Origin: Trichoplax adhaerens
Lineage: Eukaryota > Animalia > Placozoa
Reading direction: 5' to 3'
DNA length: 64,000 nucleotides
Assembly: GCF_000150275.1 (NCBI RefSeq)
Contig: NW_002060959.1
Location: forward strand, 10,632 to 74,631
The notes beneath the pieces were generated by a model. The model did no database searches. It was not told where the DNA came from and worked only from the letters and a program-made list of their open reading frames with translations. The translations under genes were made by a program, and so were the position numbers. Shown here in pieces: positions 1 to 64,000 of this stretch (positions within the stretch are counted from its first letter, which is position 1; the number at the start of each line of letters is the position of its first letter).

Positions 1-757
1 ATAGTTAGGCTAGAAATTTTAGTAATGAAAATGAATCCATGATAATTACAGCTAAACAACTGATTTACTTCAATGCTTTGATGTTCTATATAGAGGGTAG
101 AAGGCGTGAAACCTTCATGTATATAGCTGATAGAATAAAATCAAAGAAGTTAAAAGAATTTGGTCGAAAATTGAAATTACAGCCTAATGACGTTGATGAC
201 ATAGCCGATACGAGCGATGGCAGAATTGACAAGTGTATTCATCTGTTGGAAGCATGGAATACTACATTTACAGCAGAAGCGACATTTGATGTATTACTGT
301 CAGTTTTGAAAAGTTGCAAAGAGACATTAATAGACGATGAATTAAAATAAAATTACTTTTGCTGATGCCAAAATTATCACTACGTAATGATTGTATGAAT
401 GAAATTGGAAAGATAAATTATAGACTTAGAAAGGCGACCGGACAATGTTATGTGCATAAATTTTACTGGTGGAATGAATGGACTACTCTAGATATTTTGA
501 TTTAGTATAATTAAATTATGGCTTTACAAACCATTTCATTCCTTACATTTTTAGAATGATTTTATGCTTACTACTTCATACTGCATTGTCATAACATTTT
601 CTACAGGATTAAAGTTCGATCTATGATGCTTAGAATGAAGAAATTGATGACTGAGAAAGTTTCTTGTGCTTAAACCTGCTTGTGAAATACCATTCATTAT
701 TTTAATTTAGAAAATTAATTTATATTGAAGTTTATTGACATTTTCCTAGTTATGTTA
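1..757 (+). repeat. Segmental duplicate of ~31034-31788 (DD terminal exon plus 3' flank)
   Basis: Read-by-eye alignment is near-identical until ...ttattgacattttcctagttatgttacc, then diverges abruptly. Confidence 0.92.
94..350 (+). CDS. Terminal death-domain exon (DD type A) of a gene that starts upstream of the window
   Basis: Acceptor tctatatag|AG (phase 1); translates EGRRRETFMYIADRIKSKKLKEFGRKLKL..DVDDI..HLLEAW..ATFDVLLSVLKSCKE, a death-fold pattern; near-identical to 31127-31389. Confidence 0.8.
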
Positions 758-2741: not shown

Positions 2742-5700
2742 GTAAGCATTAAAGTTTACAAATAGACCTAACGATTAAGACTTAAGGATGTGATACATGA
2801 TTATCCCACTTTCGAGTAGAAATAACAATAAAGCGATCAGAGTAGAAAATAGTACGACATGTACATAATGAAATTAGATTTTCAATTTACAGTAGTAGAC
2901 GATATGAAAACTTGTTAAAACAATAGCGATGTGTCGTTTCGACAAGGTAAATTAAAGATTAGTATCACTTTTTATGCTGTTATACTAGTATGTTGTCAAT
3001 GAACTATGTTTCCACTATAATTTTAACATGTTTAACTAGGACAAAAGGCTATAATTTATGATAATCATGTTGTGTAAGAGTTACAATTATTTAGATCATT
3101 GATAATTTAGTACTTAAGGTAATCGGTAATACGTACTTTTAACATGTATATAAATACTGAATTGAATTTGACATTAACCAGTACGTATTGAATTAACTTA
3201 TCAAGCTAAGAGCTTTTGTGATTAATTTATGTGTATTACATTAAAATATGATTTTTGATATTGCCTGCTATAATCAGCTAAAACTTTACCGCTACTTAAT
3301 CATTACATCCTAAATTTGTAATCAATTTGATATCGCTATAAATCTAACTTTCTGATAAATATTCTCTTTGTAAGTAGCTACATAGTAACTAAATTACCTG
3401 TTGTATCTGTTATTTAGGTCGAAAACCGAAAAACTCTAAAGATATTAAAAAAGACACAGGTAATTACAACTATAGACACATTTTAATGCTATTATGGGTT
3501 CATCACAATTTTAAGAATATCATTTATCCTTCTATGGTCGTTAAAATTTAATTATTATTAGGATTTGTCAAACTTTACTTAAAGTTATGTTTATGCAAGA
3601 TATTTAGCTGTACAGATACTGTAACATGAGATGAATACATTCCAGCTAGTGATTGTAACAGTGATTGTTATCAATGCAGCGTTTCACTTAGTATATAAGA
3701 TCAAATCTTACCGGTACGTAAATTTTCATATAAGTCAAACACAATACCATTTCACCTACAAATAATATAATCAAAGCTGAATTGACACCTTTTGAGCGAG
3801 CATAATCGATTAATTAGTTGTTTTTAATAATTAGTGTTGCTTACAAATGTTTCCTAGATCATTTTATGTTATTCTTCTAAAAGTAAGTCTCATAATAACA
3901 TATTAAGTTATAAGGCATAAATTTACATCTACGAGCGTCACTGCGTTGTAACACAAGTATATGAGGAAAAGCAATTGATTAATTGCTCAGTTTCTTGGTA
4001 ATCTATATGCTATTTTTCATTTTTGTCTTCAGTAAGGCTCAATAATGGGTAATGTAAAGATCGTCTTGGATTCGTATTCCATACATGCAAATGTAATAAA
4101 ACCTGTTCTACTAGCTGCATTTAGACTGCAAGCAATAAAAAGAATTTTATAATAGCATAGTTTTATTACTGATACTCTAACAATCGAAATACTAAGTAAT
4201 AGTATAACAGGCTCTGACGGACATAGAAAAATTTGTTACAACAGCAGATTTTTGAAACAAAGACTTAAAATAATAATAACAGAATAAAATAACTACTTAA
4301 GTACGTTCCCTAACATGTTTACAACGTAAAGATTGCAAACAATAACTCTTAATACTTACACAATCTAGTATGAGAACGAAGTTTTATGACTAGAATTAGA
4401 TTTTATAACTGAACTAACAGCCTCACTACAAGACTATTCTATAGTAGACATTGCAGTAATTTTGGTGCGTAATAAATAATTGATTTCTATTCTGTTTGCA
4501 TACGGAACTGTCGACTATGCTTTTAAGTCAATGAAATAAGGATTAGCATCATATCCTATATTATATGTCGTAATCGTAATCTAACTATATCTATTATAAA
4601 GACAATGAAAGACTCTATTTATAGTCCACAAATTACGGTAGATTTTCAATTTATAAGTTTGACATTTATGCTGACCAATGGTATATTAGAATGCACGGGT
4701 AATTGCAACTATAGAAACATTTTAATTCTCTCGTGGATTCAATGCAATTTTAAGAGTATTATATTCTTTGCTAAGCTCGTTAAAATTTAGTTCTTAAAAG
4801 AATTTATTATACTATACTTTAAGTTATGTTTGTGTTATATATTTAGCTATATAGATACTTTATCGTGAGATAAATACGTTCCAACAAGTAATTATAATTT
4901 ACAAAAATTAGCTACTGGAGTCGCAATGGACATGAAATTATCTTAAATCAAACTGTTTTGTATGATAATCATTAATAGTACAACTCATGTTCGTTATACT
5001 TTGCGAACCTTATATACTTTTACTTTTTATTGTCTATTAATTATCATTGCTACTTCTCACTAAGTATATAACATCATTACATCTCAAACAATTAAAGATA
5101 AATTGACGCCTTTTGAGTAAGCATAATTGGCTCTTAATAATTCGTAGTAAATAAGCGCATATATTTCAAAATAAAACAGCTCTACAGCACTAACACCGAT
5201 AAAATCGGGCTATATTACCCCAGAAATGATTTTAGTTTTCTTTCGTATGCATTCAATGTGCCTTTATACCGCTGAATTAATGAACTTGGGTTTATTTCGC
5301 AAGAATCTGAAACTAGTCAACAGGAAGGAATAGCAATACAAAACGATATGGATCCAATACAAGATGGTAAGTTAGTAATGGTCGTCTATATATCGTAATT
5401 AGTTTCCTTGCATGTATATACGATTAGGTGATGCCACTTATTACCATAAGATTAAAATATGTATGTTAGTTTATAATTAGCTTAGACGACATAAAATGAA
5501 ATAGTTCAATGCAAGCAATATTTTATACTTCAAATTGGCATGTTTAGAGGTGAAAGTTCGGCATTAGTCGCAATAAAGTAAAATAGAATAGTGAAGGGAA
5601 GTGTAATCTTTATTGAGCTAGTGTAAGAAAATAATCGTGTAACACTATCGGGTGAGTAACGACGTGACTAGTCGAATAACTATAGTAGTGTAGAATAGAT

Positions 5701-8154
5701 AAAGCGTGCAAGCATACCGTATAAATAACAGAACTAGCTAGCGAGATAGGCGAAAAAAGATAGCTTTTGTAATGTTAGGAGCACAGCAGGACGAAATTAT
5801 TTATGAGCGCGAATAATTCATGAAAATAGGTTACTTCTATTTTAAGCTAGTGCAACGGTATAATTTAGCTAGAGTACAAGATATTTCCACCGAGTAAATT
5901 GTTAAATATAGATCATACATATTTAGAGTTATGTTACAGTCTAGTGTAAACTAATACTTTCACTAAAAATTGACTATACTGTATTTAGAAGTGAACACTG
6001 CACAAATTTTATAAAGATATTAATGCATTTTGTTAGGAATTTTAGGAACGTCAATGAATTAATTACAACATCTAAAATATTATCGATATTCTTCCATTAT
6101 TTGATATTATTTAGATCTTAAAAGGCCTGATATCTTTATAGATATCGCTGATAATGCAAAGTCAATCAAAGTAATCGAACTTGGTCGAAAGTTACGATTA
6201 TCTAATAATGATGTTGACGATCTAGCCAATTCGAATGGTAACAGATTTGATAAGTTTATTCATCTGTTGGAGGAATGGTACTCTCAATTTGCCTCTGCAG
6301 CAACGTTTGATAAATTATTAGATGCTTTGCGTTCTTGCAATGAAGTAGTAGTGGCTGAGAAGTTGAAAAAGAAATACTCTATATCAAGCAAAAGTGGAGG
6401 TAAGATACGATTTGCGAGTACTGTATTGTATTTTAGGATAATTAACCACAATATCTAAGCCTAACATTTTCAATATGCAAGACGTATATAAGTATTACAT
6501 GATACAACTACGTCCTACCTCGCACTCGGTTTTTAGTCGCATTAATACCACACATACGAATCTGATATTTCAAATAATGATTGAATTTAGCTAAAATCGA
6601 TTGTTATGCATTCTAGAAAACACGAAGTTAGGTAGCCAATGTGCTACTGTAGATAATTCGACATAGGATATAAGCTTTACAAATAAATAAATGAACTATT
6701 TGATTGAGTAAATTCAGAAAATATACCAGTAACTAATTTTATAGCTGAAGTATTTAGCATTGCAGCTTTTACCAAACTAATCTGCTAATAATGCTACCTT
6801 TAGTACACTGTTCTATTTATTTGACTCACAGCATCTCTTAGGTATAAAACTTTATTGATGAAATCAATAAATGTAGTGGTAGTATAAATATTGAATTGAA
6901 TTTGACATTAACCAGTACGTATTGAATTAACTTATCAAGCTAAGAGCTTTTGTGATTAATTTATGTGTATTACATTAAAATATGATTTTTGATATTGCCT
7001 GCTATAATCAGCTAAAACTTTACCGCTAATTAATCATTGCATCCTAAATTTGTAATCAATTTGATATCGCTATAAATCTAACTTTCTGATAAATATTCTC
7101 TTTGTAAGTAGCTACATAGTAACTAAATTACCTGTTGTATCTGTTATTTAGGTCGAAAACCGAAAAACTCTAAAGATATTAAAAAAAACACAGGTAATTA
7201 CAACTATAGGCACATTTTAATGCTATTATGGGTTCATCACAATTTTAAGAATATCATTTACCCTTCTATGGTCGTTAAAATCTAATTATTATTAGGATTT
7301 GTCAAACATTACTTAAAGTTATGTTTATGCAAGATATTTAGCTGTACAGATACTGTAACATGAGATGAATACATTCCAGCTAGTGATTGTAACTTATAGT
7401 AATTAGGTAATAGAGTCACAACGTACATAAAACTATAACAAATTAAACTTCACTGCGTGGTGATGACTATTATTGTATTATCAATGCAGCTTTTCACTTA
7501 GTATATAAGATCAAATCTTACCGGCACGTAAATTTTCATATAACTCAAACACAATAACTATTTCACCTACAAATAATCAAAGCTAAATTTGCCGTTTTTG
7601 AGCAAGAATTACGTAAATTTAGAATATTCTTACCTGGAATTTAATTACGCACATAAGCATCGAAAGACAATAAAACCTATCATCATCAAAGATGTTGATC
7701 CAAAGAAGGATTTGATAAGTTCAGATGGCGAGAGAGATTTCTATGTTTTAGTTAGTGGTAAGGTCTACACTAAAATTCTTCGTCAAAAGCAAACAGATGA
7801 TGAATTCAAGAAAAAATTAGAGAAACTATATGGTACCGTTAAACAAAGAAATACGGGTCATTACATTTGTAACATGATTTGTGTATTCTTAGTATCCGTA
7901 TAAGAAATATTCTAATCACTTGTGTTTGCTTTAAATGATCTTTAAGTAGCAGTATGAGTGGTAAAGATCATAAAATATCGTCATGCAAAAGTACTTATTT
8001 TCACCGAACTATAAATTTGACGAATATAAATTTATGTTATATCTTGAAATTTTAGAAAGTATCGTCAAACCTAAGCCAGAGACCAAATCGAGTCAACAAC
8101 AACTTAGCCCTGCGAAAGACGAAGTTGACAAGATGGATACAGAAACGGCTCCAG
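2303..8154 (+). CDS. Multi-exon CARD - linker - DD - linker - partial TIR - linker gene; 3' end not found, possibly decaying
   Basis: Exons 2303-2475, 2632-2741, 3418-3459, 5304-5366, 6115-6399, 7152-7193, 7623-7856, 8056-8154 join in one frame using GT-AG sites; every intron after the CARD is phase 1; the 5304 acceptor and 7856 donor are weak. Confidence 0.6.
3418..3459 (+). CDS. 42-nt basic linker microexon (GRKPKNSKDIKKDT), phase 1-1
   Basis: tatttag|GT...ACAG|gtaatt; duplicated at 7152-7193. Confidence 0.7.
5304..5366 (+). CDS. Linker exon (ESETSQQEGIAIQNDMDPIQD), 5'-shortened
   Basis: Homologous to linker exons 56426-56509 and 57612-57695; donor G|gtaag; only a weak AAG acceptor. Confidence 0.55.
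6115..6399 (+). CDS. Death-domain exon (DD type A), 285 nt, phase 1-1
   Basis: tatttag|AT..; DLKRPDIFIDIADNAKSIKVIELGRKLRLSNNDVDDL...HLLEEWYSQFASAATFDKLLDALRSCNE; donor GAG|gtaag. Confidence 0.85.
6892..7603 (+). repeat. Near-identical duplicate of ~3158-3797, carrying a second copy of the microexon (7152-7193)
   Basis: Direct sequence identity visible (tgaattgaatttgacattaaccagtacg...), with one internal indel. Confidence 0.9.
7601..7856 (+). CDS. C-terminal half of a TIR domain (TIR_2-like)
   Basis: SKNYVNLEYSYLEFNYAHKHRKTIKPIII fits the TIR S..Y..S..C..E..YA....K.IIP motif (S and C altered); the N-terminal half is replaced by duplicated intron DNA. Confidence 0.65.
8056..8154 (+). CDS. 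99-nt linker exon (ESIVKPKPETKSSQQQLSPAKDEVDKMDTETAP), phase 1-1
   Basis: attttag|AA ... CCAG|gtaaat, open frame. Confidence 0.7.
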
Positions 8155-28040: not shown

Positions 28041-31000
28041 CTGCACAACGCTATTTTAACCTGATTATCAAAGATATTGGCGCAGAATGGAAAGACTTAG
28101 CTAGAGTCCTAGATTTTGATCAGACCCAAATTAAAACTATTAAAGCCAATAATCCTCTCGATGTCAATGACCAATGTGCGGAGATGTTACATGTACAACA
28201 TAATACGAAAGGGAAAAGTTTCAACAAGTTAGAGCTAATTAAAGCTCTCTATGAAGCTAATTTAGCTGCAGTTGCAGAAAAGATAAACATCGATCCGGAT
28301 GAGATAACCCAAGATCCTGGTAAATATCGTCATTGTTTAATATTTTTACTTGACGTAGAAAATTGTTAATTAACTACTATACTAATATGAATATTAGAGT
28401 TATTGCATCATGAATTAAGATTAGTATCGACACAGCAGTAGAGTTGATCACTAGAATAACTAATAGTTACAGTATAATGAAATTAATTAATGAGAGATAA
28501 ATATGTATAATTACTACTTGAAATTTAAAACCTATATGTAGTGAGAGCCAGCAAGCATTAAACAGTAATAAAGATCAAGGTCAAGTACATAAAATTGTTC
28601 ATTTAAAATAACTAGAATATATTCAGTGAAAGAGTAAGACATATATCATATTGTATAAATGCTACAGAATTGACAAAATCCTTTTAGTTATAAATGTCAC
28701 AAAGACACGATATCGCAATGTATCAAAGTCAAAGGCATGAAATTAGGGATTTAAACAGATAGATTATAATTAACAAAAAGTGCAATCAAGGCTCAATGTA
28801 ACAGAATTAACTAGTGTAATACTTAGAGAAGTTACAACAGAAAGAAATGATAAGTTAATAGTTTAGTTAATATAGATTGTTCTGCTATGATTTGATTTTA
28901 TAAATGCACATATAACAATGTGCACTTTTACTTTGAAAAAAAATTTGTACTAAAAGTTATCATAGCTAAACAAACTAACTTACATTACGATTACTTAATT
29001 AATGTTCTATTCTACTTAAAATTACTGCATTAGCAAGATTAAACTAGCTATAAGTAATTGGCCGCTACCGCTAACTTTATCAAGCCTACATAGCATGATG
29101 CTTATGTTATAAACCTGCAATAAGAATCAGGTTATCAACTAATTACATAATTTCCTTTTGATTTTTTCTATTGTATAGGTAATAGTGGATCAAAAATTAA
29201 TCGTCAGCAGAGTACTGGTATGATAAATTATATAACAAGTACTAGCAGCGTCCTAGTAGACATTTTTAGCTTTACGTATTGTAATACATGAATCTATGAT
29301 TTAAAGTCCATCAATTAGATAAATGCTATTACTAATCAAATGTTGCAGATACTACCGAATATCTCTTTGATGTGGCAGATAAACTACAAGAAGATTGGAT
29401 TAAATTAGTACCAAGGTTGGATCGAGAAGGAAAGATTGATATTAAAAAGATTCAAAATAAGAGTAACGACCACTTTGATCGTGGTTTTGAATTTTTGGAT
29501 AAATGGCATGGAATATATGGTAAATCTGCTACCAAAAATAAATTAAAAGCGGCGCTAAAAGTTATTAAGAGGGCTGATGTCGCAGACGAGATTGGTATTT
29601 AAATTAATCTAATATAACGTAAAACTCACTATGAATTTATATTCGTTTTATAAGGAATATCAAATTACAATAAACTGTGATATCGTGTCACTATCACGGA
29701 AAACAATTTATAATGTACTAGTATTAGATTATATTGATGTATAAAATATTACCAGATATTTAATTTTTAGTCATTTAGAGCATATACTAGGCATATTATC
29801 CATGTAGTGTATTACAGCTGTCGATTAAAGTTGGTTAAAAGAGGTTATTCTTTATTCCAGACAACACCATAACCGGAGGCCAAAGTACCATGGCAGTCTC
29901 GTCGGCTCCGAATACAGCTACTACAATTGACAGCTCGATTAAACCTGCAATAACTACTGCTGAACAAGGTAGTTAATATATTGTTTCCATATATAAGTCA
30001 ATTTAGGATTCTTGCTATTTAGTATATCAAGTATTAGTTTTAAAAGCGCTGTAAAATAAACTTTCTAGCAAGTTCTTCAAGGTAGCTTTTCACAAAGTTT
30101 ACTATACCCATTATTCCAGAGTGATATAGTCATTCACTGAATCATTCATACTTAGAATAATAAAGGATAGCAAACAAAGTTCAACTAGGTAGATATCCCA
30201 TCAGTAAGTTGATTGTAGGTCATTGATTGATAGACAAGTCGTATGATACTTTAAATAATTATGTATTAGGCAAGTCTATTGATTTTACTAACCTTGATCA
30301 TTAGTCATATTCAAGTATGTAATTTATTTTGTAGTGGTATTTCTACAACCTTAACGTATAGCCTATTTTATGCATTTGAGATAATTTTACGAGAAGATAA
30401 AATTTACCTTATATTAGACTAGTTGATAGAATCCTTACCTGCAGTAATTCTATATCTAACTACTTGAAGGAATTTATAAGTTTGCTTAACTAAAAAACAT
30501 ATTGTGTTTATGCATACTGTATCCGAGTATGCTTTCTATCAATACTAATCCAGAATATTAAACCTGTTGTATGAATTCTGATCAAGGTGGAAGAGCTACG
30601 GATCCCATAAAAGATGGTAAATTAGTAATAGTCATCTGCTTATTTTAATTACTTTCTTGCAACATACATTAGCTTAATGCTCAGATTTGATAGTCAATCA
30701 TATATACCGTTGATTATGTCCTTAATTATTTACCTATATTTGCTATGGATTTTAACAATAACATTTGATAAATGATATGTTACTTATTAAGATTTATTTA
30801 TTTACAATACTACATCCTCACTAAGTATCAAATTTGTAGCTAAGTTATTAAGTTGCTTTAATCCCGATTAATTCATGGCCACAGTATATGTAGCATAGAA
30901 GAATTCTTATCAAGATACCACACCTGTCGCATTCAAGTATTAATACCGTAGTTTAATACCAACATAGACTACATAAACTAGGCTACACTATTGCCAACGA

Positions 31001-31389
31001 TGTTCGGTATTTCGGATCACATACAGATATTAATAAGTTAGGCTAGAAATTTTAGTAATGAAAATGAATCCATGATAATTACAGCGAAATTACACATTTA
31101 CTTCAATGCTTTGATGTTCTATATAGAGGGTAGAAGGCGCGAAATCTTCATGTATTTAGCTGATAGAATAAAATCAAAGAAATTAAAAGAATTTGGTCGA
31201 AAATTGAAATTAAATCCTAATGATGTTGATGACATAACCGATACGAACGATGTCAGATTTGACAAGTGTATTCATCTGTTGGAAACATGGTATACTACAT
31301 TTGCTTCAGAAGCGACATTTGATGTATTACTATCAGTTTTGAAAAGTTGCAAAGAGACATTAATAGCCGATGAATTAAAAAAAAATTAA
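28041..31389 (+). CDS. Triple death-domain protein (DD-C, DD-B, DD-A with linkers); first exon uncertain
   Basis: Exons 28041-28319 (..IGAEWKDLARVLDFDQTQIKTIKANNPLDVNDQCAEML..), 29179-29217, 29349-29594 (..VADKLQEDWIKLVPRL..KWHGIYGKSAT..), 29861-29968, [30554-30616 damaged], 31127-31389; all introns are phase 1 and GT-AG. Confidence 0.75.
30554..30616 (+). pseudogene. Damaged linker exon with in-frame TAA
   Basis: Homolog of the ..DPIQD linker (ends TDPIKD|gtaaat), but the spliced frame reads E-Y-stop. Confidence 0.6.
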
Positions 31390-33731: not shown

Positions 33732-42376
<8,645 letters not shown>

Positions 42377-44147
42377 CTGCAATAATTCAATCAATATGCA
42401 TGGTCAGCTAGAGTCGTTCATGCTCAACCTTCAACTTAGTCGGATGATTGATCTACTGTCATTGAGGTGCGATAGACTAGATGCACTCTCATATGAATCG
42501 GCATGACTGCTAAGGGTACGTGGATCGCAACGTGCTCCATTGCTTCCGTCCAGGTAGCCTGCATTGGCGAGCTGGGTTGGCTTAGTAAAAAATTGTTTTA
42601 CCATCGCCCGTTGTTTCCAAAAGAGTACAGTACTGTCCTAGACCTGTTTGCCCTAATCTGGTATGTCCAGACCGTAGAGGTAAGGTGAAAAAGAGTCTGT
42701 TTTTTAAATCTCAATTCAAACCCGAGTCCATCTCTGAATCGATTCACGGCTCTACAAAAACTTCCTTCCTCGTATGCTCTCCGCCCTCGCCCAATTCAAT
42801 TTTATTTTCTACCGATGACGTACGTCAACATTTCCATTTTCAGGTACAGTATAGTGACACGGCAGGTCTAGTGACACCTAGCGTCGACACCACGATCGCA
42901 CGACCGAAGGTTAAGGTTGCGCGACTGTCGCAAAAGAGTATCACGCCATTGATATCGCGAGTACTGGACAGTGTACTGTATTTTACTGTGGTTTTACTAC
43001 TGTACTGTGCATAGTTGACTATCGCGCTAGACTAGCCACTCCCCATAGTCGAGCCTTATGGTGGAGGTGACGCATTGAGTGGGTATGACTCAGTGCTAGG
43101 TGAATGTGCCAGCCGGCATCCGTCTGACACATTGCTCCATACAATCCAACTGATGATCAGTGGGCACTGTTGAGTGTTGAGGGATTGCATAGCTATTCGT
43201 TCGGTTTAGTATCCAACTACGCTTGAACAGTATTGTAAAATGGTGCAACAAGTATAGCCTGATTCGGTCTCCAATGACTTGATAGCCATACCTTGCTTTG
43301 GTGGTGATGCAAGTCGTTTCACGTAGTCAATAAAGTACAAGACACGACCGTATTCCACGGTCACTCCACGTTGACATGGTTATGGATGACTGTACCACTG
43401 CGCAGTGCGCAGTGCGCTTTACTCTTCTACGTACGGTGCATAACCATCAACAATGTTCAATATCTGATCGTTCAAACCAGTCATTTCGCTTTACTCTTCT
43501 GTACAGTATTGTACTGTACTGTACATAACCATCTCCAATGTTCAATATCTGGTCATTCGAGCCTGTCATTTCCCACGACATGGCGGATCCAGAATTGCCG
43601 GTAAAACTGTTTCAGCGGCATTTTTGCATGTATTTTACAGGGAAATATTTGGGCCTACTGATCATGGACTACTATCGCTATACAGTGCATGGATTAGTCC
43701 ATGGTGAGGTATTAAATGGAGTGGATGGTGTAATCCGTCGCCGGAATCGTATGGAATACAGTAATATCTAATCTACGGTGCTGTCAGGTACAGACTGTAT
43801 AAATAGTACCTGTTGTTTGAAAAACAACATTTTTTTTAAAGCTATTTTTGAAATGCCATCCAAGTATGGCTGAGCCTTGAACCACTAGGACCTTGGAAAA
43901 GAACGATACAGTAACTGAAACTGTTACTAACAGCCCTGTTAGCCATTTAACAGTAATATTAAAAGTCATTATGTCACGCCGAACAATGATCTCGCAAAGT
44001 TGGAAGCCCTTAACCGATTGAGTACAAGCTGCATTGACATAAGTCCATTTAGATATAGTCGTTCCATACTCATCATGTCAATTCAGAATACCCTAAACCC
44101 CTAAATTAGCGATGCGATTGAAATTGAAGAGAAAAAAAATAGCTTAC

Positions 44148-52632: not shown

Positions 52633-53477
52633 ATGGTCAAAATCTGGTCTCTCTTTGCTATTGTGGCTCTCTTACCACTTGTCATGCCAAATGTAAGTCT
52701 AATAGCTCAAGTTTAGATCGGATATACTCGTATACCTTTAGTAATTCTAATTCCCTTGATTTCGATCTGTAATATGAATAATGACGTTTACTTCTGTAGA
52801 CACATCACAAACCTAAATCATGCTATGAAGTTAAACAATTCCTTAAAGCTACTGAAAATGGCTTTTTCACTCTTTATGATGCTAACGGTAACCCGTTCCG
52901 AAGTTTTTGCGATTTCGAATCAGAACCGCCTTTCGCTTGGACATTAATTGAATCTATGACTCTCGAAAATGCTCAAAAAGCACAACATAATAAGGGCTTC
53001 AGTGTCAATATCCCATTAGGCGAATGTCATACCTCTATGTCTCTCTTTCGCCTTCCATCCCATCATATGTCTTCTGTTTTATCTTCTTATGGATCCACAC
53101 ATTATCGTTCAACATGCAATTTCAATATCATTGAAGGAACTGGTCTAGCTAATCGTCGCGACTATATAAGATTCTCGGCATGTAGAGGTGCTTCTACTCT
53201 CAGTAATATAAACGGTGGCTGTGTAGAGGTAGATTATATCAATATCAGAGGGCAATCATGTAGAAAGTGCCAGATGCCATTTTATGCTTCTAGTTCATAT
53301 CATCTTCATATCGATCTTAGTGGCGCAACAACTACTTGTAGTAGATTTGGTTTTACTAATTTTGTAGCCAATGAAGATGTGTTTGGCTACTATAACTCTC
53401 ATAATCCAACATTTTCTTGTACTGCCAACAAAAATTCAACTACTGCTTGGTGGATAGGTGGGGCATATGCCGAGTAA
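52633..53477 (+). CDS. Paralogous secreted Cys-rich fibrinogen-like protein, ~245 aa
   Basis: Exon 52633-52692 MVKIWSLFAIVALLPLVMPN|gtaag; exon 52800-53477 THHKPKSCYEVKQFLKATENGFFTLYDANGNPFRSFCDFESEPPFAWTLIES...STTAWWIGGAYAE*. Confidence 0.88.
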
Positions 53478-55762: not shown

Positions 55763-58700
55763 TCACTCTTTTCTTTGTATGCAGTATTCCTCTTTCAATT
55801 TTTCGGCCATTTTTCCCTCTCTGCATTCACATAAAACTTTCAATAATGTATCAAGCTTTGTTGTTGAGCTGAATTCAGAATACCATGCCTCCAGCAGACG
55901 ATCAACCTTCCAAAATCTGCTATTATTTGAATCAACTATTTCGTTAATGCTATTCGACGATAAATGCAATTTTCTACCAAATTCGGCCAACTTAGTTGAT
56001 TCTATTTTATCGGCGATATCTATAAAGATGCTACGTCTATTAGAATCTATTAGGGAAGATCAAAATATTTGAACAAATCAATAATGTGGAGGTCATTATT
56101 AATTTGTTGTCATTGCTAAAATTCCGAGTACAGCACATCGTTATTTACCTATAAATTAAAACACTGAAAATCATTGACAATGAACTATTCATTTTTAGGT
56201 AGTATTCACTTAGCATTGGACTAATGAGCAGATTTTACATTACCAGTGGTTTTAGTATCATAATGACAATTCGAATATGTAACGAAATTATGGCAATGGA
56301 TTAATAGCTTTTAGAACAACGAAATGACTATGCTATAAAAATTATGCTTCGTGAGAAGGCAATATCAAGCTGTTACAAGTTCTCGAAAACTATTTGAGAT
56401 AAATAGGTGATCATTACTACTTTACCATCCTGTATTGGATCCATTGTGTTTTGAGTTGCCGTTTCTCCTTGTTGACTAGTCGTAGATTCTTGCATAACTG
56501 GTTTGATACCTACCGATTTACGTTAACAGATGCAAGTAATATATGAAATAAATATGAGAATATTAAATTTTTGGTGTTAAATATTGAAGGCTGTAGGTTC
56601 GTTTAAGTCGCTTGACATGGTATTGCAGCAGGTATTACAACATTATTTTATTCATATCTTTAACAAGCTCTATGTTTACGCACATGTACATATAAAAGCG
56701 AAAAAAGACACAATTTGAAACAAGTCAATAGATTCTATCAACTTGTCTAATTCAGAGTCACTATGTCCTATGATAACAATTGTTAAAATGCCTAAATGAG
56801 ATCTATGTTGAAAGTTTTATCACTATTTGACAATTTATAATATTGCTGGAATATGCGTGATACTCGTGGAACTCCAATTCGAGACGTCGAAACATTATTT
56901 TATGGCATATGAATATAAGATAGCGAATGCAATTGTTACTAATTCACTTGTCGTTATCTTATTCATAGTTAGTAAACTAATTAATATTTAAAACAGTAAA
57001 ATGGATAGAAAGGTTAGATAAACCAGTTTATTCTCACATCAATAGGTTTAAGAGTATCTATCATTGATTGAGACCAAAGCTGCTGTGATACTGATTATAT
57101 ATAATTATTATTCGTTAAAATACGATGTCAATTTCAAAATTTATAGTCATAATTGCGAATTTTTGGATTAATGAAAAGAACTTAATATCAAATAGTACCC
57201 ATCTCTAGTAGCTTATCCCTTACAAATTACTATGAATGGTATATTCGAGCACTACAAGAATAATTTGTCATACTGTATTGATTGCACATGCTTACTTATA
57301 AAAGTGTCATGAGTGCCTAAACGAGATCTATCTCAAAACTTTTATCACTGCTCGACCATTCGCGATGTTATTGGAGTATGCGTTATACTCATGTAGCTCC
57401 AATTCAAGATATTAAAACATTAAGTTTTAAGTCAATAAGGAGATAAGAAAGCGAAAGCAATTGTAATTATTAATTCACTCGTCTGTAACTTATAATTATT
57501 TATAACCAATAAAATAATTAACGATTTATGCAGTAAAATATATAGAAAGTCTAGAAAAACGAATTTTTTTTAAGTAAATAGTTTTAATAATAACTACCAT
57601 TGCTAATTTACTATCTTGTAATGGATCTATACCGTTTTGAGTTGTTGTTCCTCCTTGTTGACTGCTTATTGATTCTTGCACCACAGGTGTAATATCTACA
57701 GATTTGCGTCGAGTAAGTAACATCTGATTATTTATGAAAATATTGAATTTTAGCTGTGTTAGGTTTTATACATTAAGCGTATAATTTCATTTCAGTCGCT
57801 TGATATGGAATTATAGCAGCGGTTGCTACATTATTCTATCCATCTACTAAACAAGCTATATATATGCGCACATGTAAATATAAAAAGCTATCGAAAGACA
57901 CAATAGGGATCAACTCAATAGATTCTTTCAATTTGTCTAATTTAGAGCTTCTTTGGCTTCTTATAACCTTATTTTAAATCCCTAAATGAGATCTATGTTA
58001 CAATTCTATCTCTACTCGAGCATTCACGATGTTACTGGAATATGCGTAATACTTGTGCAGCTGCAATTTAAGGTGTCAAAACATTACTTTTTATGAAATA
58101 TGAACATAAGAAGGCGAATGCAATTGTAATCATCAATTCATCTATCGCTAAATTACTCATATCTAGTAAACTAATTAACATTTAATGTAATAAAATGAAT
58201 AGAAAGGCTAGAAAAGCCAATTTCTTTTTACATCAATAAATTTTAGAGTATCTACTGTTAATTGAAACAAAAACCATTGTAGTACTAGTCAATATTCGTT
58301 AAAAATTCGATATCAATTTCAAAATTTATAGTTATAATTGTAAATTTTCTTAATTTAGGAAAGAATTTAATATAATTAAGATTTATCTCTAGTGGTTCAT
58401 CATTCTACATATTACTGTAAACAGCATATATTTGCGTACTATACACATGAATAATATTGTTTCGCAGGCTCAATTATAAAATTGTCATTCTTTTACATTG
58501 ACGTTAAGTCGTATTGACGCTAACACTGAAATGAACGAAGGACTAACAAATTAACGGACGATACGGCCGACTGGAGTAGTGGTGTCGCAAAAAGCTCGCG
58601 ACGCGGAAACCAGGGATCATTAAAACTCCTTAAAAGGTAAAGCTACAACAGCTGAACGTGTCTACAACAGACTAGGAGTAGTCTAGTTTGAGGTTTAAAA

Positions 58701-61700
58701 GGATTTATTTAATTTAGTAGTCTTGAAATCCAAGGCTACTTCATCCACACGCACACCACTCGGCTAATCATCAACGGATCAGTTAATGAGAGGACCGGGC
58801 TTTATATACTTTCTCTCGGCTGCACAACTTAGATAAATAATTCTAAAACTTATACAGAACTGTATGGCCAACTGTTTACGAAGTCTGTACTTCGTCGCAA
58901 CTGGTGTAACTAATGTTGCCTATTGTGTAAGATTAAGGTTTTACTCGTGCCTAGCGATTGACCGGAAAATTAGACTCGTGCTGCGTACGACGTAAAATTT
59001 AGAAATGTGCAAGCTATTGCATGACGGTAATAAACACTCATTGGAATTTAATTTAGTAATTTAAAAGTGTAAATCGTCGGCTCTTTGGTATCTAGCAGAT
59101 TCAATATCGACTGAATCTTGGCCTGTATCTAGCTTATGCAAGATTACATTTTAAACTACTCAGAATTTTATTAGAAACCGAAAGATAATTGCGGTGTTTT
59201 TGCTATCTCCTTTCTTAGTTATAGCTAAAGTACACAAAAATATCTGAGATATTGCGAATAATGATGAAATTTTCAAGATCAAATTATACCAGTAAGTCAA
59301 TTTTACTTCGATTTTAGCGCTAATGTTAAAGAATAAAATATCTGTATATAGCCTATGAAAGTATTTGCTATAATTCCAGTACTAATGTTAATGTCAATCT
59401 ATTGATTTGCGAAAATTTTAGTTTATTATGCTCTCTATTCAAATATACTGTAAACTATTGATATATATTATACAGAATAAAACTCATAATTATAATAGGA
59501 AGGCTTCTTACTAATACTCTTGCTGCAGATTCTAGGTTACTTATCTATACTTGCAAAAAGCATCTACTACTTTTGGTTGGTCAAACGGATTACGATTCTA
59601 TTCTGCAGCAAAATCTAGGTAGATTACATTCATTACTGTTTAATCAAGGTAAAATCTCCGGTCTACCGGCGATAAAGCTAACAAGATTTTGCTTGAAGAA
59701 GGCCGTCAGTAGAGAAATGAAATAAGCAATTTAGAGTTTATCAGATCTAGCTATGAACATCTCCCAGAATTGAGATTAACTCAAAAAAAAACATGCTAGT
59801 TAGGAAAAGTAACAAAGGAATAAACTGAGTTACTAGCAAATCTAAAATGAATCATTCCTTAAGCTGTGGATTTAGTCAAGAGAACTAATCAAATTCTTTT
59901 TGCTAATGTATTGCTTTCAAATTTTGTCTGTAATTAATTAAATAGTGTATTATATTTTAATCTCAACTAGCTATACCTGGCAACATTGTCCACCCATGGA
60001 CAGATCCACATTCGTAAATTTCATCACAATTGCAATATAACAGCTGTGAGCTGCTCTGGACTGGACTATTCACATCAACAAATGTATTGCAATTTGCACA
60101 CTTTATAAAATATAAACAATCTGAATTTTTGCATCTTGGCATCCGTTCCTTAATCAGTGATGATAATTTATTTCGAATAAATATATATGGTGGTTTTTCA
60201 TTTATAAGTTTTTTTACTTTATCTTCTATCTGTCGTTGTAGGCTAGGTTTATTTGACATCATTCGATAGCGATACTTGATACCAATCCAGGAACTTTCTT
60301 TTTTAACAATAATATCACAACAATATTCTTTCAGACGATATTTTGCACACTTGTAACGTGGCTCAATCTCTGAACTTTGCCATTCTTTATAACAAGATAC
60401 AAGTAAACAAAATAATATGCCATCTGGAATATAAGGCATTTGTGGTGGCTTAAATCCTATGTACAGCCATCCCGATGTTTTATATCCTTTGTCATCAAAT
60501 TCCTGGCTATTTGAACGAAATAAATAGGGCACGAAATACTGATCAGGACAATTGTCATTTTCATTACTGATCTTGCAAATAATGTCGTACGATTCCATTA
60601 AATCCAACAGAAATTTTCTGTCCTTTTCTTCTACTTCGAGCTTGTCAAATTGGTCATTAATATAGCGTGATGACATAATTCCTGAATCTCGAGCAGCTTC
60701 ATATTCTGCGTTTATTCTTAATCCTTTACAAACAGGTTCATCTAACTGAATAATTGTACGGAATATGTTTAATAGCCATTCAACTTGTGTAATAACTTTT
60801 CCTTTAGCAGATTCTTTTTGGCAATAAACAATTTCTCCTAGATCATGCAGATAGAGTAGCATTTGGTGAATATCTTCACTTCCATCGCATAATTGATACT
60901 CTTTCGCTAATTGTTCGATTTCTTCAGCTGCCATAATTCTACTAATTTTTTGATTCAACTTTGTAGAAAATTTTGCCGCTTGTTCGTTAAATCGATCCAA
61001 AGAAGTATGCAGTATAGCTGCCATAATATACCATTTGAATGGAATTTGAGAGAAGTGATCGATAGAAGGTTGATGATTAACAAAATCTCTCATGATATTA
61101 TGCAATTGCCCACAATTTTTTTGACGTTGCAATCGCACTTCTTCGCCATTATCTTCGTCATTACAGTTAAATATTATTTTAGAACCATATATATGATCAG
61201 AATAAGAAGGAAGCTTATTATGAATACATCTACTAAATTTCGAAAATCTTTGCTGACAGGCATTGTTATCACCTATTTTATCAGCATGCGTTCCGACTAA
61301 AATAACTATAGGCCACGCGATATTTTCTAGAGTACCATTAATTTCCGTTACAGTACGAGCATTGCTTGTGCTACTACCAATAATTGAGGCGAGCCATTCT
61401 TGTATAGCCTCCAAATATGTCATTTCGGTATCATTGCCGTCTCGATCAACGACATATTTATCTATATCTTGAGACATATCGAGGACTAACATGTAGATAC
61501 AATTGCAAGATATAAATGGCTGATGTGTTATGTGATAGATAGAATGGCCAGCAAAATCCCATAGTTTACCATAATGGCAGTCATCTATTCCGATATTTTG
61601 GTTGGACTCATAGTGACCTCGAAAGTAATTCTCGAGAAATTCTAGAGGGATGGTCTCTTCATCTGCCGATACAGACTCAGAAAAGGTCGACTCCTCATCT

Positions 61701-63413
61701 TCCAGTACAGACTCAGAAAAGGTCGACTCTTCATCTGCCGATACAGACTCAGAAAAGGTCGACTCCTCATCTTCCAGTACAGACTCAGAAAAGGTCGACT
61801 CTTCATCTGCCGATACAGACTCAGAAAAGGTCGACTCCTCATCTTCCAGTACAGACTTATAATAATCTGATAGAACTTGAGATAACTGTATTGCTTGTCG
61901 AGTATCATAGGAGGAAAAATCTGAAAGCGATTTCTCTAATTTCATTTGGTATTTAATAGTTTCTATTGCTGTAACTACTTTTCTCGCTAGGACAGATATA
62001 AACTCATCGACCGATTTATTATCGACGTTATATGTAAGTAATTTGATAAGTTCTTTCGTTACTACTGCCGCCGTTGTCGGTCCAATTTTACCAATCAATC
62101 CTTGCCGTGTGAAGGCTTGGATAAGACATGATTTTCCGACATTTTGAGGACCTGTTATCAGGAATCTAATGAAATCATTACGACAAGATCCCTCTTTTCT
62201 AGCTTTTGCATACGCTTCCTTATATTCTTTCTCTTGAGTGAATATAAAATTAAATGTCAAAGAATAATTAATACATTTTACCTCTAATAGATACTTCAAA
62301 AGCGTCACCAGGTATATAATTGGAAAATTACATTTTCATAAATTTCCTGACTTAGTAATATTGCTACAGTAACTATCCATGACATGGTATTGTATATAAA
62401 AAATTGCAACTCTTATCATATCTTGCAAAACTTTCATGCACGAACAACTCAACTTTAAAAGAAGAAAGTTGCACAATTAATGTCGTAGTTACCAATTACG
62501 TTCTTGATCAATGTTCCACATACTTAATAAAGAAACCTGATGTGATTTATAGTAATGTGAAAATTGTTTTCCTATAGTATAACATACCTTCTATGATCTT
62601 GGACATCGCATTCCTTTCTTGCTTTTCCAGTTCATTTAGGCGTAGAAACGCTACAATAGTATCGCATAAAATTAATATTACAAAGAGGTTGTCGTACTTA
62701 TTAATTCTTATAACAGCTAAAACTATTTTGATGAAGATTATATAATTATAGGTCTTAATAAGCAAAGTAAATACTGTAGTAGGTACTAATCTTATTATCA
62801 GATAGGCAAGTTGATTTACTTTGCTAATACTCGTTTAAGGATGGAAGTAATATTAACATTTCGAAGTCATAGAAATAAATTAAGAGCATATTTAACATGT
62901 AACATAAAACGCTCAACAAAAATATTATATTCTACTTTGTTTCAATTTTTTAAAATACTACTATTCAACAATATACTCCCACAACTATCAGTGAATCGCA
63001 TTCCTAAGAGCATTCACTAATTTAGTGAATGAGTAAATCAGTTGCGTTCAACAAAGCCATCACATTAATATATGTATGTTACGTATACATAGTTCGTGTA
63101 CCATGATTATAATCGACAATAGAGAACGTATTAAAGATAAAGCAATTTGTCGTACAATAACCTTGATCTCTGTTTATTTCATCGACCATACCACTTTTAC
63201 CAATGCGCAATAAAGCATCATTCAGTCGGTCAATGGTAGCGGATAAGCCGTATTTCGTATGCCATTTCTTGAGAAAAGCCATCGCTTGATGATCTTCTAT
63301 TTTGTATTTTGACTTGATAGCCTTGATGTTAATCGAAGGATCTAAGATCGCTGCTAACCTTGTCCAATCCCCTTTAATCCTGACTGCAATGTTGGAAAAG
63401 TAGACTCTGGGGT
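55763..63413 (-). CDS. Roco-family GTPase: DD - linker - Roc-COR - linkers - DD; 5' end not identified
   Basis: Exons 63413-63162 (DD-B), 62650-62588, 62232-59977 (Roc-COR), 57695-57612, 56509-56426, 56046-55763 (DD-A, stop); all internal exons are multiples of 3 with phase-1 GT-AG borders. Confidence 0.7.
56400..58465. repeat. Tandem duplication (~1.19-kb offset) carrying the 84-nt linker exon and its intron
   Basis: ~56420-57265 aligns with ~57605-58465; a sub-duplication ~56760-56960 also recurs at ~57305-57490. Confidence 0.8.
58468..59095. mobile_element. Possible LTR-like/transposon remnant in a Roco intron
   Basis: GC/CpG-richer block starting where the tandem-duplication homology stops; minus-strand TATA-like (tatataaa, ~58805) then aataaa-like (~58705); no TSD found. 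Confidence 0.3.
59977..62232 (-). CDS. Roc GTPase plus COR domain exon (2256 nt)
   Basis: G1 GPQNVGKS, G3 WDFAGH..Y.ITHQPF, G4 LVGTHAD; COR motifs IPFKW, LLYLHDLGEIVY, WL, YFVPYL; C-terminal CANC..CNC. Confidence 0.9.
61655..61857 (-). repeat. In-frame 72-bp (2 x 36-bp) tandem repeat, ~2.8 copies
   Basis: Encodes (SVLEDEESTFSE SVSADEESTFSE)n; the DNA copies appear identical. Confidence 0.95.
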
Positions 63414-64000
63414 CTATAAATAGTTATTGATAACATAATATAATCATCATATGAAACAGTCATTTCCATTAACTTTCCTATTCGTCGCAATAATGAATTA
63501 ACAGAATACTCTAACTAGTATGTCTTTTTTGAAATATATAATTAATTACATGCTTACAGCCCTCCATTCTTAGAAACTATATTAATAGATTTACAAAGTA
63601 CAATTACGGACCTCTTATGCTATCCATCTTCAGTTAAGATTAAGCTGGTTTGATTTTATACCTGAATTCAGAACATGAGTGAAAGCTAACTGCTATCATT
63701 TTAAGACTAAGTAACAAGTAGAAAGTATAAAATGATACTGATATTAATTATTGATACCTTCAGGTGGAATTTTTTTCTCAATTATTTTCTTTTATCTGGA
63801 TAGTGTAATCGGCTGATTCCTGTCGATTCTAAACTTCGTTAACTTCGACAATTGTTGAAAATCAGTAACAAGGTTACAATACTTATTTCATACTGAATCA
63901 GATGATGAAGTAAAAAACAAGGAAATTATTATTTCAAATACCTATCTAACATTACAGTCTTCCTCTACTTAACTGCATTAATAACAAAAAAACGATAGCT

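What the first reader, a model, noticed from the sequence alone, without database searches (positions are those of the whole stretch)
55763..63413. Roco GTPase flanked by death domains on both sides, with no LRR or kinase in view
Seen: DD-B exon, one 2256-nt Roc-COR exon ending in CxxC..CxC, two duplicated linkers, then a terminal DD-A. The ORF track ends the protein at 59963, but a phase-1 donor (CCAG|gtatag, 59977) would extend it to the DD. Established: DAPK1 has Roc-COR-DD and LRRK proteins have LRR-Roc-COR-kinase. Inference: a GTP-switched death-fold scaffold analogous to an NLR/apoptosome, with Roc-COR as the switch.
Basis: partly seen in the sequence, partly recalled or inferred. Interest (0 to 1): 0.8.

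Follow-up and report, generated by a model that had tools for sequence, protein, structure and literature searches.

The report
Placozoan Roco GTPase flanked by death domains
This is a real-looking Trichoplax adhaerens gene for a Roc-COR GTPase with a death domain at each end and no LRR or kinase, but it is one more member of a large, already published placozoan family, so it is not a new kind of protein.

Summary
On the minus strand there are six phase-compatible exons: a 16-nt start exon, an N-terminal Death exon, a single 2256-nt Roc-COR exon ending in a Cys-rich module, two duplicated 84-nt linker exons, and a terminal Death exon. Together they give 991 codons with no internal stop. Both Death exons pass Pfam's cut-off. 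The large exon folds as a Roc-COR tandem that matches LRRK1, LRRK2 and C. tepidum Roco.

No LRR, kinase or TPR lies upstream. The next gene is a divergently transcribed CARD gene.

The genome is Trichoplax adhaerens. The locus, introns included, is a diverged segmental duplicate of TRIADDRAFT_61414/61415. The evidence-based Trichoplax sp. H2 orthologue of that paralogue (RDD45516.1) is already annotated as DD-DD-Roc-COR-linker-DD and uses the homologous splice sites.

The genome holds more than 50 Roc-COR exons. About 20 are followed by a Death exon, and 7, this one included, are flanked by one on both sides. Civiero et al. 2014 already reported at least 17 Trichoplax ROCO genes with CARD and death domains. 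This scan noted the same family on other pieces of this genome (s1-734983, s1-733991).

The idea of a GTP-switched death-fold scaffold is plausible, untested and not new. No transcript data were available. Verdict: new member of a known kind, interest about 0.3.

The parts
63612..63627 (-). Predicted first coding exon (ATG plus 13 nt, donor G|gtccgt, phase 1). An in-frame TAA lies three codons upstream.
   Evidence: Read directly from the sequence. It is 87.5% identical to paralogous locus C1392, against 52% for the following intron. Inferred; no transcript evidence.
63162..63413 (-).
   Evidence: Pfam PF00531 scores 35.6 bits, cut-off 22.6. The AF2 model has pLDDT 90 and TM 0.85-0.87 to the ankyrin-G and FADD death domains. 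It is 45% identical to both N-terminal DDs of P0015. Its donor, G|gttattgt, is homologous to the donor used in the H2 model.
59977..62232 (-). Single 2256-nt exon, phase 1-1, encoding Roc (with a large internal insertion), COR-A, COR-B and a Cys-rich C-terminal module.
   Evidence: Pfam Roc and COR-A both score above their cut-offs. The AF2 model has pTM 0.75 and matches LRRK1 8e05, C. tepidum RocCOR 3dpu and LRRK2 at Foldseek E 1e-13 to 1e-12. dN/dS is 0.24-0.28.
62129..62152 (-). Roc P-loop (G1, GxxxxGKS; exon residues 28-35).
   Evidence: G28, G33 and K34 are invariant in the 16-sequence alignment A2.
61547..61558 (-). Roc G3 / switch II motif DFAG (exon residues 226-229).
   Evidence: D226 is invariant and G229 nearly invariant in A2.
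61280..61291 (-). Roc G4 motif THAD (exon residues 315-318).
   Evidence: H316 and D318 are invariant in A2.
61655..61857 (-). In-frame 72-nt tandem repeat, 2.8 copies, 100% identical, encoding an acidic Ser-rich stretch inside the Roc insertion.
   Evidence: Tandem Repeats Finder. The stretch is disordered in the model, pLDDT below 50 over residues 123-195. Paralogues do not align across this stretch.
60521..60958 (-). COR-A.
   Evidence: Pfam PF16095 scores 51.1 bits, cut-off 35.3.
59978..60142 (-). Cys-rich module after COR-B (C-x4-C, C-x2-C, C-x-C, C-x3-H), probably zinc-binding.
   Evidence: Read from the sequence. The Cys positions are conserved in the family consensus. The model shows short beta strands at pLDDT 61-89. 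Relative P0011 gives a weak IBR_1 hit, E 0.0036. Metal binding is inferred.
59963..59965 (-). In-frame TAA four codons past the donor. It would end a DD-less product if intron 3 were retained.
   Evidence: JGI model P0002 of the paralogue stops at the homologous place.
57612..57695 (-). Linker exon 1 (84 nt, phase 1-1).
   Evidence: Splice sites ctgtag| and |gtaaat. Homologous to the single linker exon of P0015.
56426..56509 (-). Linker exon 2 (84 nt, phase 1-1), the duplicate of linker exon 1.
   Evidence: Splice sites cggtag| and |gtaaag. It lies in the 1.19-kb tandem duplication 56412-57190 / 57598-58373, which is 76-81% identical in exon and intron alike.
55763..56046 (-).
   Evidence: Pfam PF00531 scores 37.1 bits. 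It is 57% identical to the C-terminal DD of P0015. Acceptor cctaatag|, phase 1.

Best explanation
**What it is.** A single Trichoplax adhaerens gene on the minus strand, about 7.9 kb with six coding exons. Its predicted product is about 991 aa: N-terminal Death domain, Roc GTPase, COR-A/COR-B, a Cys-rich (probably zinc-binding) module, one or two short low-complexity linkers, and a C-terminal Death domain of a different subtype. It is a diverged segmental duplicate of TRIADDRAFT_61414/61415. It belongs to the large, lineage-specific placozoan expansion of Roco genes whose ends carry interchangeable death-fold modules (Death, CARD) or TPRs.

**How it probably works (inferred, not shown).**
1. 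The Roc domain binds and hydrolyses GTP. Its G1, G3 and G4 motifs are intact.
2. As in bacterial Roco proteins and LRRK1/2, the nucleotide state is coupled through COR to the conformation or oligomeric state of the protein.
3. That change alters how the two terminal Death domains are presented, so they can nucleate or join homotypic death-fold assemblies with other DD or CARD proteins. Many such genes lie next to this one.
4. The protein would therefore work like an NLR or Apaf-1-type switchable scaffold, using a Roc-COR GTPase where those use a STAND ATPase.

Because every exon is phase 1-1, the DD and linker modules can be shuffled, duplicated or skipped without breaking the frame. That fits the variable ends seen among close paralogues.

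The confidence given is for the gene structure and the family placement. For the mechanism alone I would put it at about 0.4.
For: **Exon structure.** The exons, their phases and the uninterrupted 991-codon frame are.

**Domains.** Pfam Death (twice), Roc and COR-A all score above their cut-offs. The Roc-COR fold matches LRRK1, LRRK2 and CtRoco. The N-terminal DD fold matches solved death domains at TM 0.85-0.87. The GTPase motif residues are invariant across 16 relatives.

**Selection.** dN/dS is 0.24-0.28 on Roc-COR and 0.5-0.64 on the DD exons.

**Genome identity.** The genome is T. adhaerens: P0001, P0002 and P0005 map at 99.9-100% to G000:C1392.

**Support from the paralogue.** The H2 orthologue of the paralogue, P0015 (RDD45516.1), is annotated DD-DD-Roc-COR-linker-DD. 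Its junctions fall at the homologous donor after ...HGW-x4 and at the homologous DD acceptors. The H2 models were evidence-based MAKER predictions made with RNA-seq (PMC6057997). The locus is collinear with that paralogue through introns at 72-80% nucleotide identity.

**5' boundary.** A conserved start exon is present. The upstream neighbour is a plus-strand CARD ORF, and no other domain lies in between.

**Recurrence.** Seven Roc-COR loci, this one included, have a same-strand Death exon within about 4 kb on both sides. About 20 have one within 2 kb downstream.

**Literature.** Civiero et al. 2014 list at least 17 T. adhaerens ROCO genes with CARD, death, TPR, LRR and AAA domains.
Against: - No transcript evidence was available for this locus. 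Every junction is predicted.
- No annotated protein containing this exon was retrieved. The best hit was a paralogue at 69% identity, so neither public annotation seems to call this gene within the length range that search can see.
- The JGI models of the paralogue split the same layout into a DD-only gene (TRIADDRAFT_61415) and a Roc-COR gene that ends at the in-frame stop (TRIADDRAFT_61414).
- The N-terminal DD depends on a 16-nt start exon that is inferred only from conservation. The ATG that the H2 model uses in the paralogue is a TAA here.
- The two linker exons have diverged no more slowly than the surrounding intron, so one of them may be unused.
- Because all exons are phase 1-1, frame compatibility is weak evidence for any particular join.
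- GTP binding, oligomerisation and DD partners are all untested.
Confidence: 0.7

Rival explanations
1. The locus is two or three transcription units or isoforms, not one DD-Roc-COR-DD protein. On this reading the main product is a DD-less Roc-COR protein that ends at the TAA at 59963 (intron 3 retained or never spliced). The flanking DD exons would be separate small DD-only genes, or would be used only in minor isoforms.
For: The JGI annotation of the closest paralogue is split this way: TRIADDRAFT_61414 (760 aa) ends ...GIAK* at the homologous stop, and TRIADDRAFT_61415 (165 aa) is a DD-only model upstream. A stop lies only four codons past the donor, both here and in the paralogue. All exons are phase 1-1, so skipping any of them is frame-neutral.
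Against: Neither the terminal DD exon nor the linker exons has a start codon ahead of its domain, and each begins at a good acceptor. The DD-B exon ends at a donor homologous to the one the H2 model uses. The evidence-based H2 model joins all parts of the paralogue into one protein. JGI models P0001 and P0005 also join Roc-COR to a C-terminal DD.
Confidence: 0.15
2. The locus is a recently duplicated copy that is silent or decaying: an unprocessed pseudogene that keeps an open frame only because it is young.
For: No annotated protein was retrieved for it. The ATG that starts the H2 model in the paralogue is a TAA here. There is a perfect 72-nt tandem repeat inside the GTPase domain. The linker exon was duplicated and has diverged at an intron-like rate. 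The family shows birth and death, with about 10 Roc-COR fragments carrying internal stops elsewhere in the genome.
Against: dS against the nearest paralogues is 0.59-0.70, so the copy is not young, yet 752 + 84 + 95 codons remain open in DNA of about 30% G+C, and dN/dS is 0.24-0.28. All ten splice signals are intact. The GTPase motifs are intact. The tandem repeat is in frame and sits in a disordered loop that varies among paralogues.
Confidence: 0.1

Closest known systems
Trichoplax sp. H2 TrispH2_003508 (RDD45516.1, P0015), with its T. adhaerens counterpart TRIADDRAFT_61414 + 61415
   Same: The domain order matches: Death - Roc(with insertion) - COR - Cys-rich module - linker - Death. The Roc-COR exon is 74% identical in protein. 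The splice positions are homologous, and the locus is collinear through introns.
   Different: The paralogue has two tandem N-terminal DDs and one linker exon. This gene has one N-terminal DD and two linker exons. This gene also carries a private 72-nt tandem repeat and lacks the ATG used by the H2 model.
Placozoan ROCO family as catalogued by Civiero et al. 2014 (Chem Biol; PMC4104024)
   Same: These are Roc-COR proteins of T. adhaerens surrounded by CARD, death, TPR and other domains. The named members TRIADDRAFT_62404, 61412 and 61416 are 48-69% identical to this exon.
   Different: That survey listed at least 17 genes from the JGI models. The six-frame search here finds more than 50 Roc-COR pieces, roughly 33 of them with intact frames of about 700 aa. 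This particular gene does not appear among the proteins retrieved.
DAPK1 (kinase - ankyrin - Roc-COR - Death)
   Same: It is the one well-studied animal protein that combines Roc-COR with a C-terminal Death domain (established knowledge).
   Different: This locus has no kinase, calmodulin-binding or ankyrin region, and it has a second Death domain at the N-terminus. It is not a DAPK orthologue.
LRRK1/LRRK2 and Chlorobium tepidum Roco
   Same: These are the best structural and profile matches for the Roc-COR tandem.
   Different: This gene has no LRR, kinase or WD40. Its Roc domain carries an insertion of about 140 residues between strand 2 and strand 3.
NLR / Apaf-1 (STAND ATPase with death-fold effector domains)
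   Same: The logic matches: a nucleotide switch fused to death-fold adaptor domains, with lineage-specific expansion in Trichoplax (PMC6321704).
   Different: The switch here is a Roc GTPase with COR, not a NACHT or NB-ARC ATPase, and there is no repeat-type sensor domain. The analogy is one of function only.
Molluscan TIR/Death-ROCO fusions (Aplysia 'MyD88-like' protein and TLRs with ROC-COR; PMC9334734)
   Same: Roc-COR is fused to innate-immunity adaptor domains in an invertebrate.
   Different: The partner domains differ (TIR, LRR, EF-hand, MBT) and so does the phylum. No homology beyond Roc-COR was tested here.

Membership tests
Roco (Roc-COR) GTPases | Roc (Ras of complex proteins) GTPase domain | tested here: met
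   PF08477 scores 37-40 bits, cut-off 27. The profile hits C. tepidum Roco and LRRK2 Roc among PDB sequences at E 1e-16 to 1e-7.
Roco (Roc-COR) GTPases | COR domain immediately C-terminal of Roc, forming one tandem | tested here: met
   PF16095 COR-A scores 51 bits, cut-off 35.3. The AF2 model aligns over 530-590 columns to the Roc-COR of LRRK1 (8e05), CtRoco (3dpu, 6hlu) and LRRK2, Foldseek E 1e-13 to 1e-12.
Roco (Roc-COR) GTPases | Intact nucleotide-binding motifs (G1 P-loop, G3 DxxG, G4 [NT][KH]xD) | tested here: met
   GxxxxGKS, DFAG and THAD are present. G28, G33, K34, D226, H316 and D318 are invariant in alignment A2.
Roco (Roc-COR) GTPases | GTP binding and hydrolysis, and COR-mediated dimerisation | not testable with these tools
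   These are biochemical properties. They are inferred from family membership only.
Death domain (Death-fold superfamily, DD subfamily) | Sequence match to the Death profile, for both terminal exons | tested here: met
   PF00531 scores 35.6 bits (N-terminal exon) and 37.1 bits (C-terminal exon), cut-off 22.6. The six-frame scan gives 34.4 and 36.4 bits.
Death domain (Death-fold superfamily, DD subfamily) | Death-domain helical-bundle fold | tested here: met
   This was tested for the N-terminal exon only. AF2 gives pLDDT 90.1 (DSSP merges the first helices). The top PDB matches are all death domains (ankyrin-G, FADD, TRADD, RIPK1) at TM 0.80-0.87 and rmsd 1.4-2.3 A. The C-terminal DD was not folded.
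DAPK1 orthologues | N-terminal Ser/Thr kinase and ankyrin repeats before Roc-COR | tested here: not met
   There are no kinase or ankyrin hits in any exon or in the upstream open frames. The protein starts with a Death domain.
LRRK / LRR-Roco | Leucine-rich repeats N-terminal of Roc, and for LRRK a kinase after COR | tested here: not met
   No LRR or kinase hit was found. The 2 kb upstream ends at a divergent CARD gene.
NLR / STAND NTPases | NACHT or NB-ARC ATPase module | tested here: not met
   The NTPase here is a Roc GTPase and no STAND profile matched. The resemblance is one of architecture and logic only.

The most novel reading that the evidence does not exclude
Placozoan Roco proteins with a different death-fold subtype at each end may be a true third class of switchable death-fold signalosome nucleators, alongside STAND-ATPase NLRs and Apaf-1. 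On this reading, GTP-dependent changes in Roc-COR would bring the N- and C-terminal Death domains into register, bridging two distinct partner sets: for example the neighbouring DD-only adaptors and the CARD proteins. Phase-1-1 exon shuffling would generate the repertoire. This gene would be an unannotated member of that system.
Probability: 0.25. Interest if true: 0.6.

Novelty: new member of a known kind. Interest (0 to 1): 0.3.

Why it matters
Placozoans have no LRR-bearing NLRs (Kamm et al. 2019), yet they keep dozens of Roc-COR genes tipped with Death, CARD or TPR modules. If these act as nucleotide-gated death-fold scaffolds, they would show that early animals built cell-death or immune signalosomes on a GTPase chassis related to LRRK2 and DAPK1. 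They would also offer a minimal, kinase-free Roc-COR for studying how that switch works. This locus adds three things: a clean example with a DD on both ends, evidence that the public gene sets undercount the family, and evidence that the modules sit on frame-neutral (phase 1-1) exons. It does not add a new kind of protein.

Tried and rejected
- **Homodimer prediction.** A prediction for the COR-B plus Cys-rich part (window:59978-60601, two copies) returned no verdict, score 0.00, with the chain itself poorly folded. It is evidence neither for nor against dimerisation.
- **Looking for a called gene at the locus.** I looked up a neighbouring single-exon ORF (52956-53474) to see the called genes around the locus. 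Whether the gene is annotated therefore stays open.
- **The upstream DD as the last exon of another gene.** I considered that the N-terminal DD exon might be the terminal exon of an upstream tandem Roco gene. I rejected this because the 10 kb upstream has no Roc-COR or TPR match and the nearest upstream gene is a plus-strand CARD ORF.
- **The window as a different placozoan genus.** The 69% best hit first suggested this. I rejected it because TRIADDRAFT proteins map at 100% to other contigs of the same assembly. The 69% hit is a paralogue.
- **A promoter from the TATAAAA at 63660-63654.** It lies only 33 nt before the ATG and reads CATAAAA in the paralogue, so I make no claim from it.
- **The joined spliced model.** I neither searched nor folded it. 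All searches were exon by exon, by reference. The only joined step was an in-script count of codons and stops.
- **The large representative-protein search.** I did not run it, because the family scans and the word search had already placed the protein.


Full report
**What is in the sequence**

The window is AT-rich (about 30% G+C) eukaryotic DNA. On the minus strand between 63627 and 55763 there is a chain of six open pieces.

- **Roc-COR exon.** The central piece is a 790-codon stop-free frame (62335-59966). Pfam finds Roc (37-40 bits, cut-off 27) and COR-A (51 bits, cut-off 35.3) in it.
- **N-terminal Death exon.** The exon 63413-63162 is a Death domain at 35.6 bits against a cut-off of 22.6.
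- **Downstream exons.** There are two 84-nt exons (57695-57612 and 56509-56426) whose peptides are 67% identical. They are followed by a terminal Death exon, 56046-55766, with a TGA stop at 55765-55763 (37.1 bits).
- **Frame.** Every junction is phase 1. Frame bookkeeping over the exons gives 2976 nt, or 991 codons plus a stop, with no internal stop.

The joined model was neither searched nor folded.

**The 5' end**

The Death exon has no ATG ahead of the domain and opens with an acceptor (tttatag|AC). That raises two possibilities: more 5' exons exist, or the exon belongs to another gene.

Aligning the region with its paralogous locus (G000:C1392) shows a conserved block about 200 nt upstream. 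It contains ATG plus 13 nt followed by G|gtccgt (63627-63612, phase 1), with an in-frame TAA three codons before it. This block is 87.5% identical between the loci, against 52% for the intron that follows. I take it as the start exon. This is inference, not transcript evidence.

Beyond the window I fetched 10 kb more of the contig. No Roc-COR, TPR, LRR or kinase match lies there. The first recognisable gene is a plus-strand CARD ORF about 1.8 kb upstream of the start exon (PF00619, 26.8 bits). The minus-strand open frames in between have no Pfam match.

**The folds**

- **Roc-COR.** An AF2 model of the large exon, built on 16 relatives, has pTM 0.75 and mean pLDDT 73.5. Its best PDB matches are LRRK1 (8e05), the C. 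tepidum RocCOR tandem (3dpu, 6hlu) and LRRK2, at Foldseek E 1e-13 to 1e-12 over 530-590 columns. A sequence profile of the family gives the same answer.
- **GTPase motifs.** The P-loop (G28, G33, K34), DFAG (D226) and THAD (H316, D318) are invariant across the alignment.
- **N-terminal Death exon.** It folds as a compact helical bundle at pLDDT 90. Its top matches are all death domains (ankyrin-G, FADD, TRADD, RIPK1) at TM 0.80-0.87.
- **Cys-rich tail.** After COR-B come two helices and a small Cys-rich beta module with the spacing C-x4-C, C-x2-C, C-x-C, C-x3-H. The Cys positions are conserved in the family consensus.

**Whose genome, and which family**

The closest proteins are Trichoplax adhaerens TRIADDRAFT_61412, 61414, 62406, 62404 and 61416, at 48-69% identity. 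Three of these map at 99.9-100% to contig C1392 of the window's own assembly. The genome is therefore T. adhaerens and these hits are paralogues.

No protein identical to the window's exon was retrieved.

A six-frame search of the assembly finds 83 matching pieces, which I merged into about 54 Roc-COR loci. Roughly 33 have intact frames of about 700 aa and about 10 carry internal stops. The same kind of search finds 118 Death exons. Crossing the two lists gives about 20 Roc-COR exons with a same-strand Death exon within 2 kb downstream. Seven, this one included, have one on both sides within about 4 kb.

**Support for the splice model from the paralogue**

The 90%-identity cluster of TRIADDRAFT_61414 also holds a Trichoplax sp. 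H2 protein of 1087 aa, TrispH2_003508 (RDD45516.1, P0015). Pfam finds three Death stretches plus Roc and COR-A in it.

Both of its N-terminal DDs are 45% identical to the window's N-terminal DD. Its C-terminal DD is 57% identical to the window's terminal DD. It then passes through a single linker exon homologous to both of the window's linkers, and enters the DD exon at the homologous acceptor.

The H2 gene set was made with MAKER using RNA-seq evidence (PMC6057997). I could not check transcript support for that particular model.

The older JGI models of the same paralogue split it into a DD-only gene (61415) and a Roc-COR gene that stops at the in-frame stop (61414). That split is the main rival reading.

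The window's locus is collinear with the paralogue through introns at 72-80% nucleotide identity. The whole gene is therefore a diverged segmental duplicate.

**Selection and turnover**

Against its two nearest paralogues the Roc-COR exon has dN/dS of 0.24-0.28 at dS 0.59-0.70. It has been under purifying selection for a long time. The Death exons evolve faster, with dN/dS of 0.5-0.64. The N-terminal DD exon is less conserved at the nucleotide level (67.5%) than the non-coding DNA on either side of it (76-80%).

The two linker exons lie in a 1.19-kb tandem duplication. Exon and intron within it have diverged alike, at 76-81% identity, so one copy may be redundant.

Among close paralogues the ends differ:
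- one DD here;
- two DDs in P0015;
- CARD in TRIADDRAFT_62404 (per its UniRef name; Pfam found no CARD in it) and a sub-threshold CARD match (21.7 bits, cut-off 23.9) in the H2 form of 61412;
- a C-terminal DD of a third class in 61412, whose best match in the window is a plus-strand DD exon at 28043-28285, not this gene's tail.

With all exons in phase 1-1, this is the signature of exon shuffling. It agrees with an earlier follow-up in this scan on another part of the genome (s1-734983).

**How it probably works**

Shown here: the domain content, intact GTPase motifs, purifying selection, and a recurrent architecture.

Inferred from what is known of Roco proteins and death-fold signalling:
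1. Roc cycles between GTP and GDP.
2. COR couples that cycle to conformation or oligomeric state.
3. The two terminal Death domains, which are of different subtypes, recruit or nucleate homotypic assemblies with other DD or CARD proteins.

This works like an NLR or Apaf-1, but the protein is not a member of that family because it has no STAND ATPase. It is also not a DAPK or LRRK orthologue, because it has no kinase, ankyrin or LRR.

**Novelty**

- Civiero et al. 2014 (PMC4104024) already reported at least 17 ROCO genes in T. adhaerens with CARD, death, TPR, LRR and AAA domains. Later work cites this as the most diverse Roco repertoire known alongside Dictyostelium (PMC11378527).
- Kaur et al. 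2021 (PMC8195603) treat bacterial homologues of the DAP-kinase GTPase plus COR, with LRRs like those of NACHT and AP-ATPase receptors, as the centre of a conflict system.
- ROCO fusions with TIR and Death are described in Aplysia (PMC9334734).
- A DD-DD-Roc-COR-DD protein is in GenBank as a hypothetical protein.

What is new here is modest: an apparently uncalled family member, a larger family count than published, and the phase-1-1 modular exon structure at this locus. I rate it a new member of a known kind, interest 0.3.

Noticed in passing
window 61655-61857 (minus-strand coding): A perfect 72-nt in-frame tandem repeat (2.8 copies, 100% identical; the 36-nt sub-units are 88% identical) encodes an acidic Ser-rich stretch inside the Roc domain. 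Paralogues do not align across it. It is either a very recent expansion or an assembly effect.
   Followed up: partly
window about 61590-62025 (exon residues about 70-215): The whole placozoan subfamily has an insertion of about 140 residues in the Roc domain, between strand 2 and strand 3. It consists of a long helical hairpin (moderate confidence) and then a disordered, paralogue-specific acidic loop. It produces weak Dynamin_N hits in relatives. It is not seen in LRRK1, LRRK2 or CtRoco.
   Followed up: partly
window 59978-60142: A conserved Cys-rich module lies after COR-B (C-x4-C, C-x2-C, C-x-C, C-x3-H). It has no Pfam hit here, though relative P0011 gives a weak IBR_1 match. It may be a zinc ribbon. 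Its role is unknown.
   Followed up: partly
window 56412-57190 and 57598-58373: A 1.19-kb tandem duplication carries the linker exon plus intron sequence. It is 76-81% identical throughout, and the exon is no better conserved than the intron.
   Followed up: yes
window 81-344, 5294-5365, 6120-6338, 28043-28285, 29345-29590, 31114-31383 (all plus strand): There are further Death exons of three classes, and a linker-like exon upstream of one of them. The same linker plus DD-A module as in the Roco gene recurs in DD-only genes. More Death exons follow on the contig up to about 150 kb.
   Followed up: partly
L015:2020-2439 and L015:9651-9998 (contig C1398:76019-76438 and 83650-83997, plus strand): Two near-identical ORFs lie just upstream of the Roco gene, transcribed divergently. 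The first is a CARD by Pfam (PF00619, 26.8 bits); the second was not scanned.
   Followed up: partly
window 33732-42394 (minus strand): An animal-type fatty acid synthase gene is present. The domains found are KS, KS C-terminal extension/AT, DH, pseudo-KR, ER, KR, ACP and TE. One 1711-codon exon holds most of them.
   Followed up: no
G000:C1392:23972-24202 (L016:6973-7203, minus strand): A second DD-A-type exon lies downstream of the paralogous Roco gene. At the nucleotide level it is 80% identical to this gene's terminal DD, closer than the exon used in the H2 model. It carries an in-frame TAA, so it is likely a decaying duplicate exon.
   Followed up: no
window 63100-63161 and 63162-63413: The N-terminal DD exon is less conserved with its paralogue (67.5% nt) than the first 60 nt of the intron after it (about 80%) and the block upstream of the start exon (76%). 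Either the DD is evolving fast or the flanks are constrained.
   Followed up: partly
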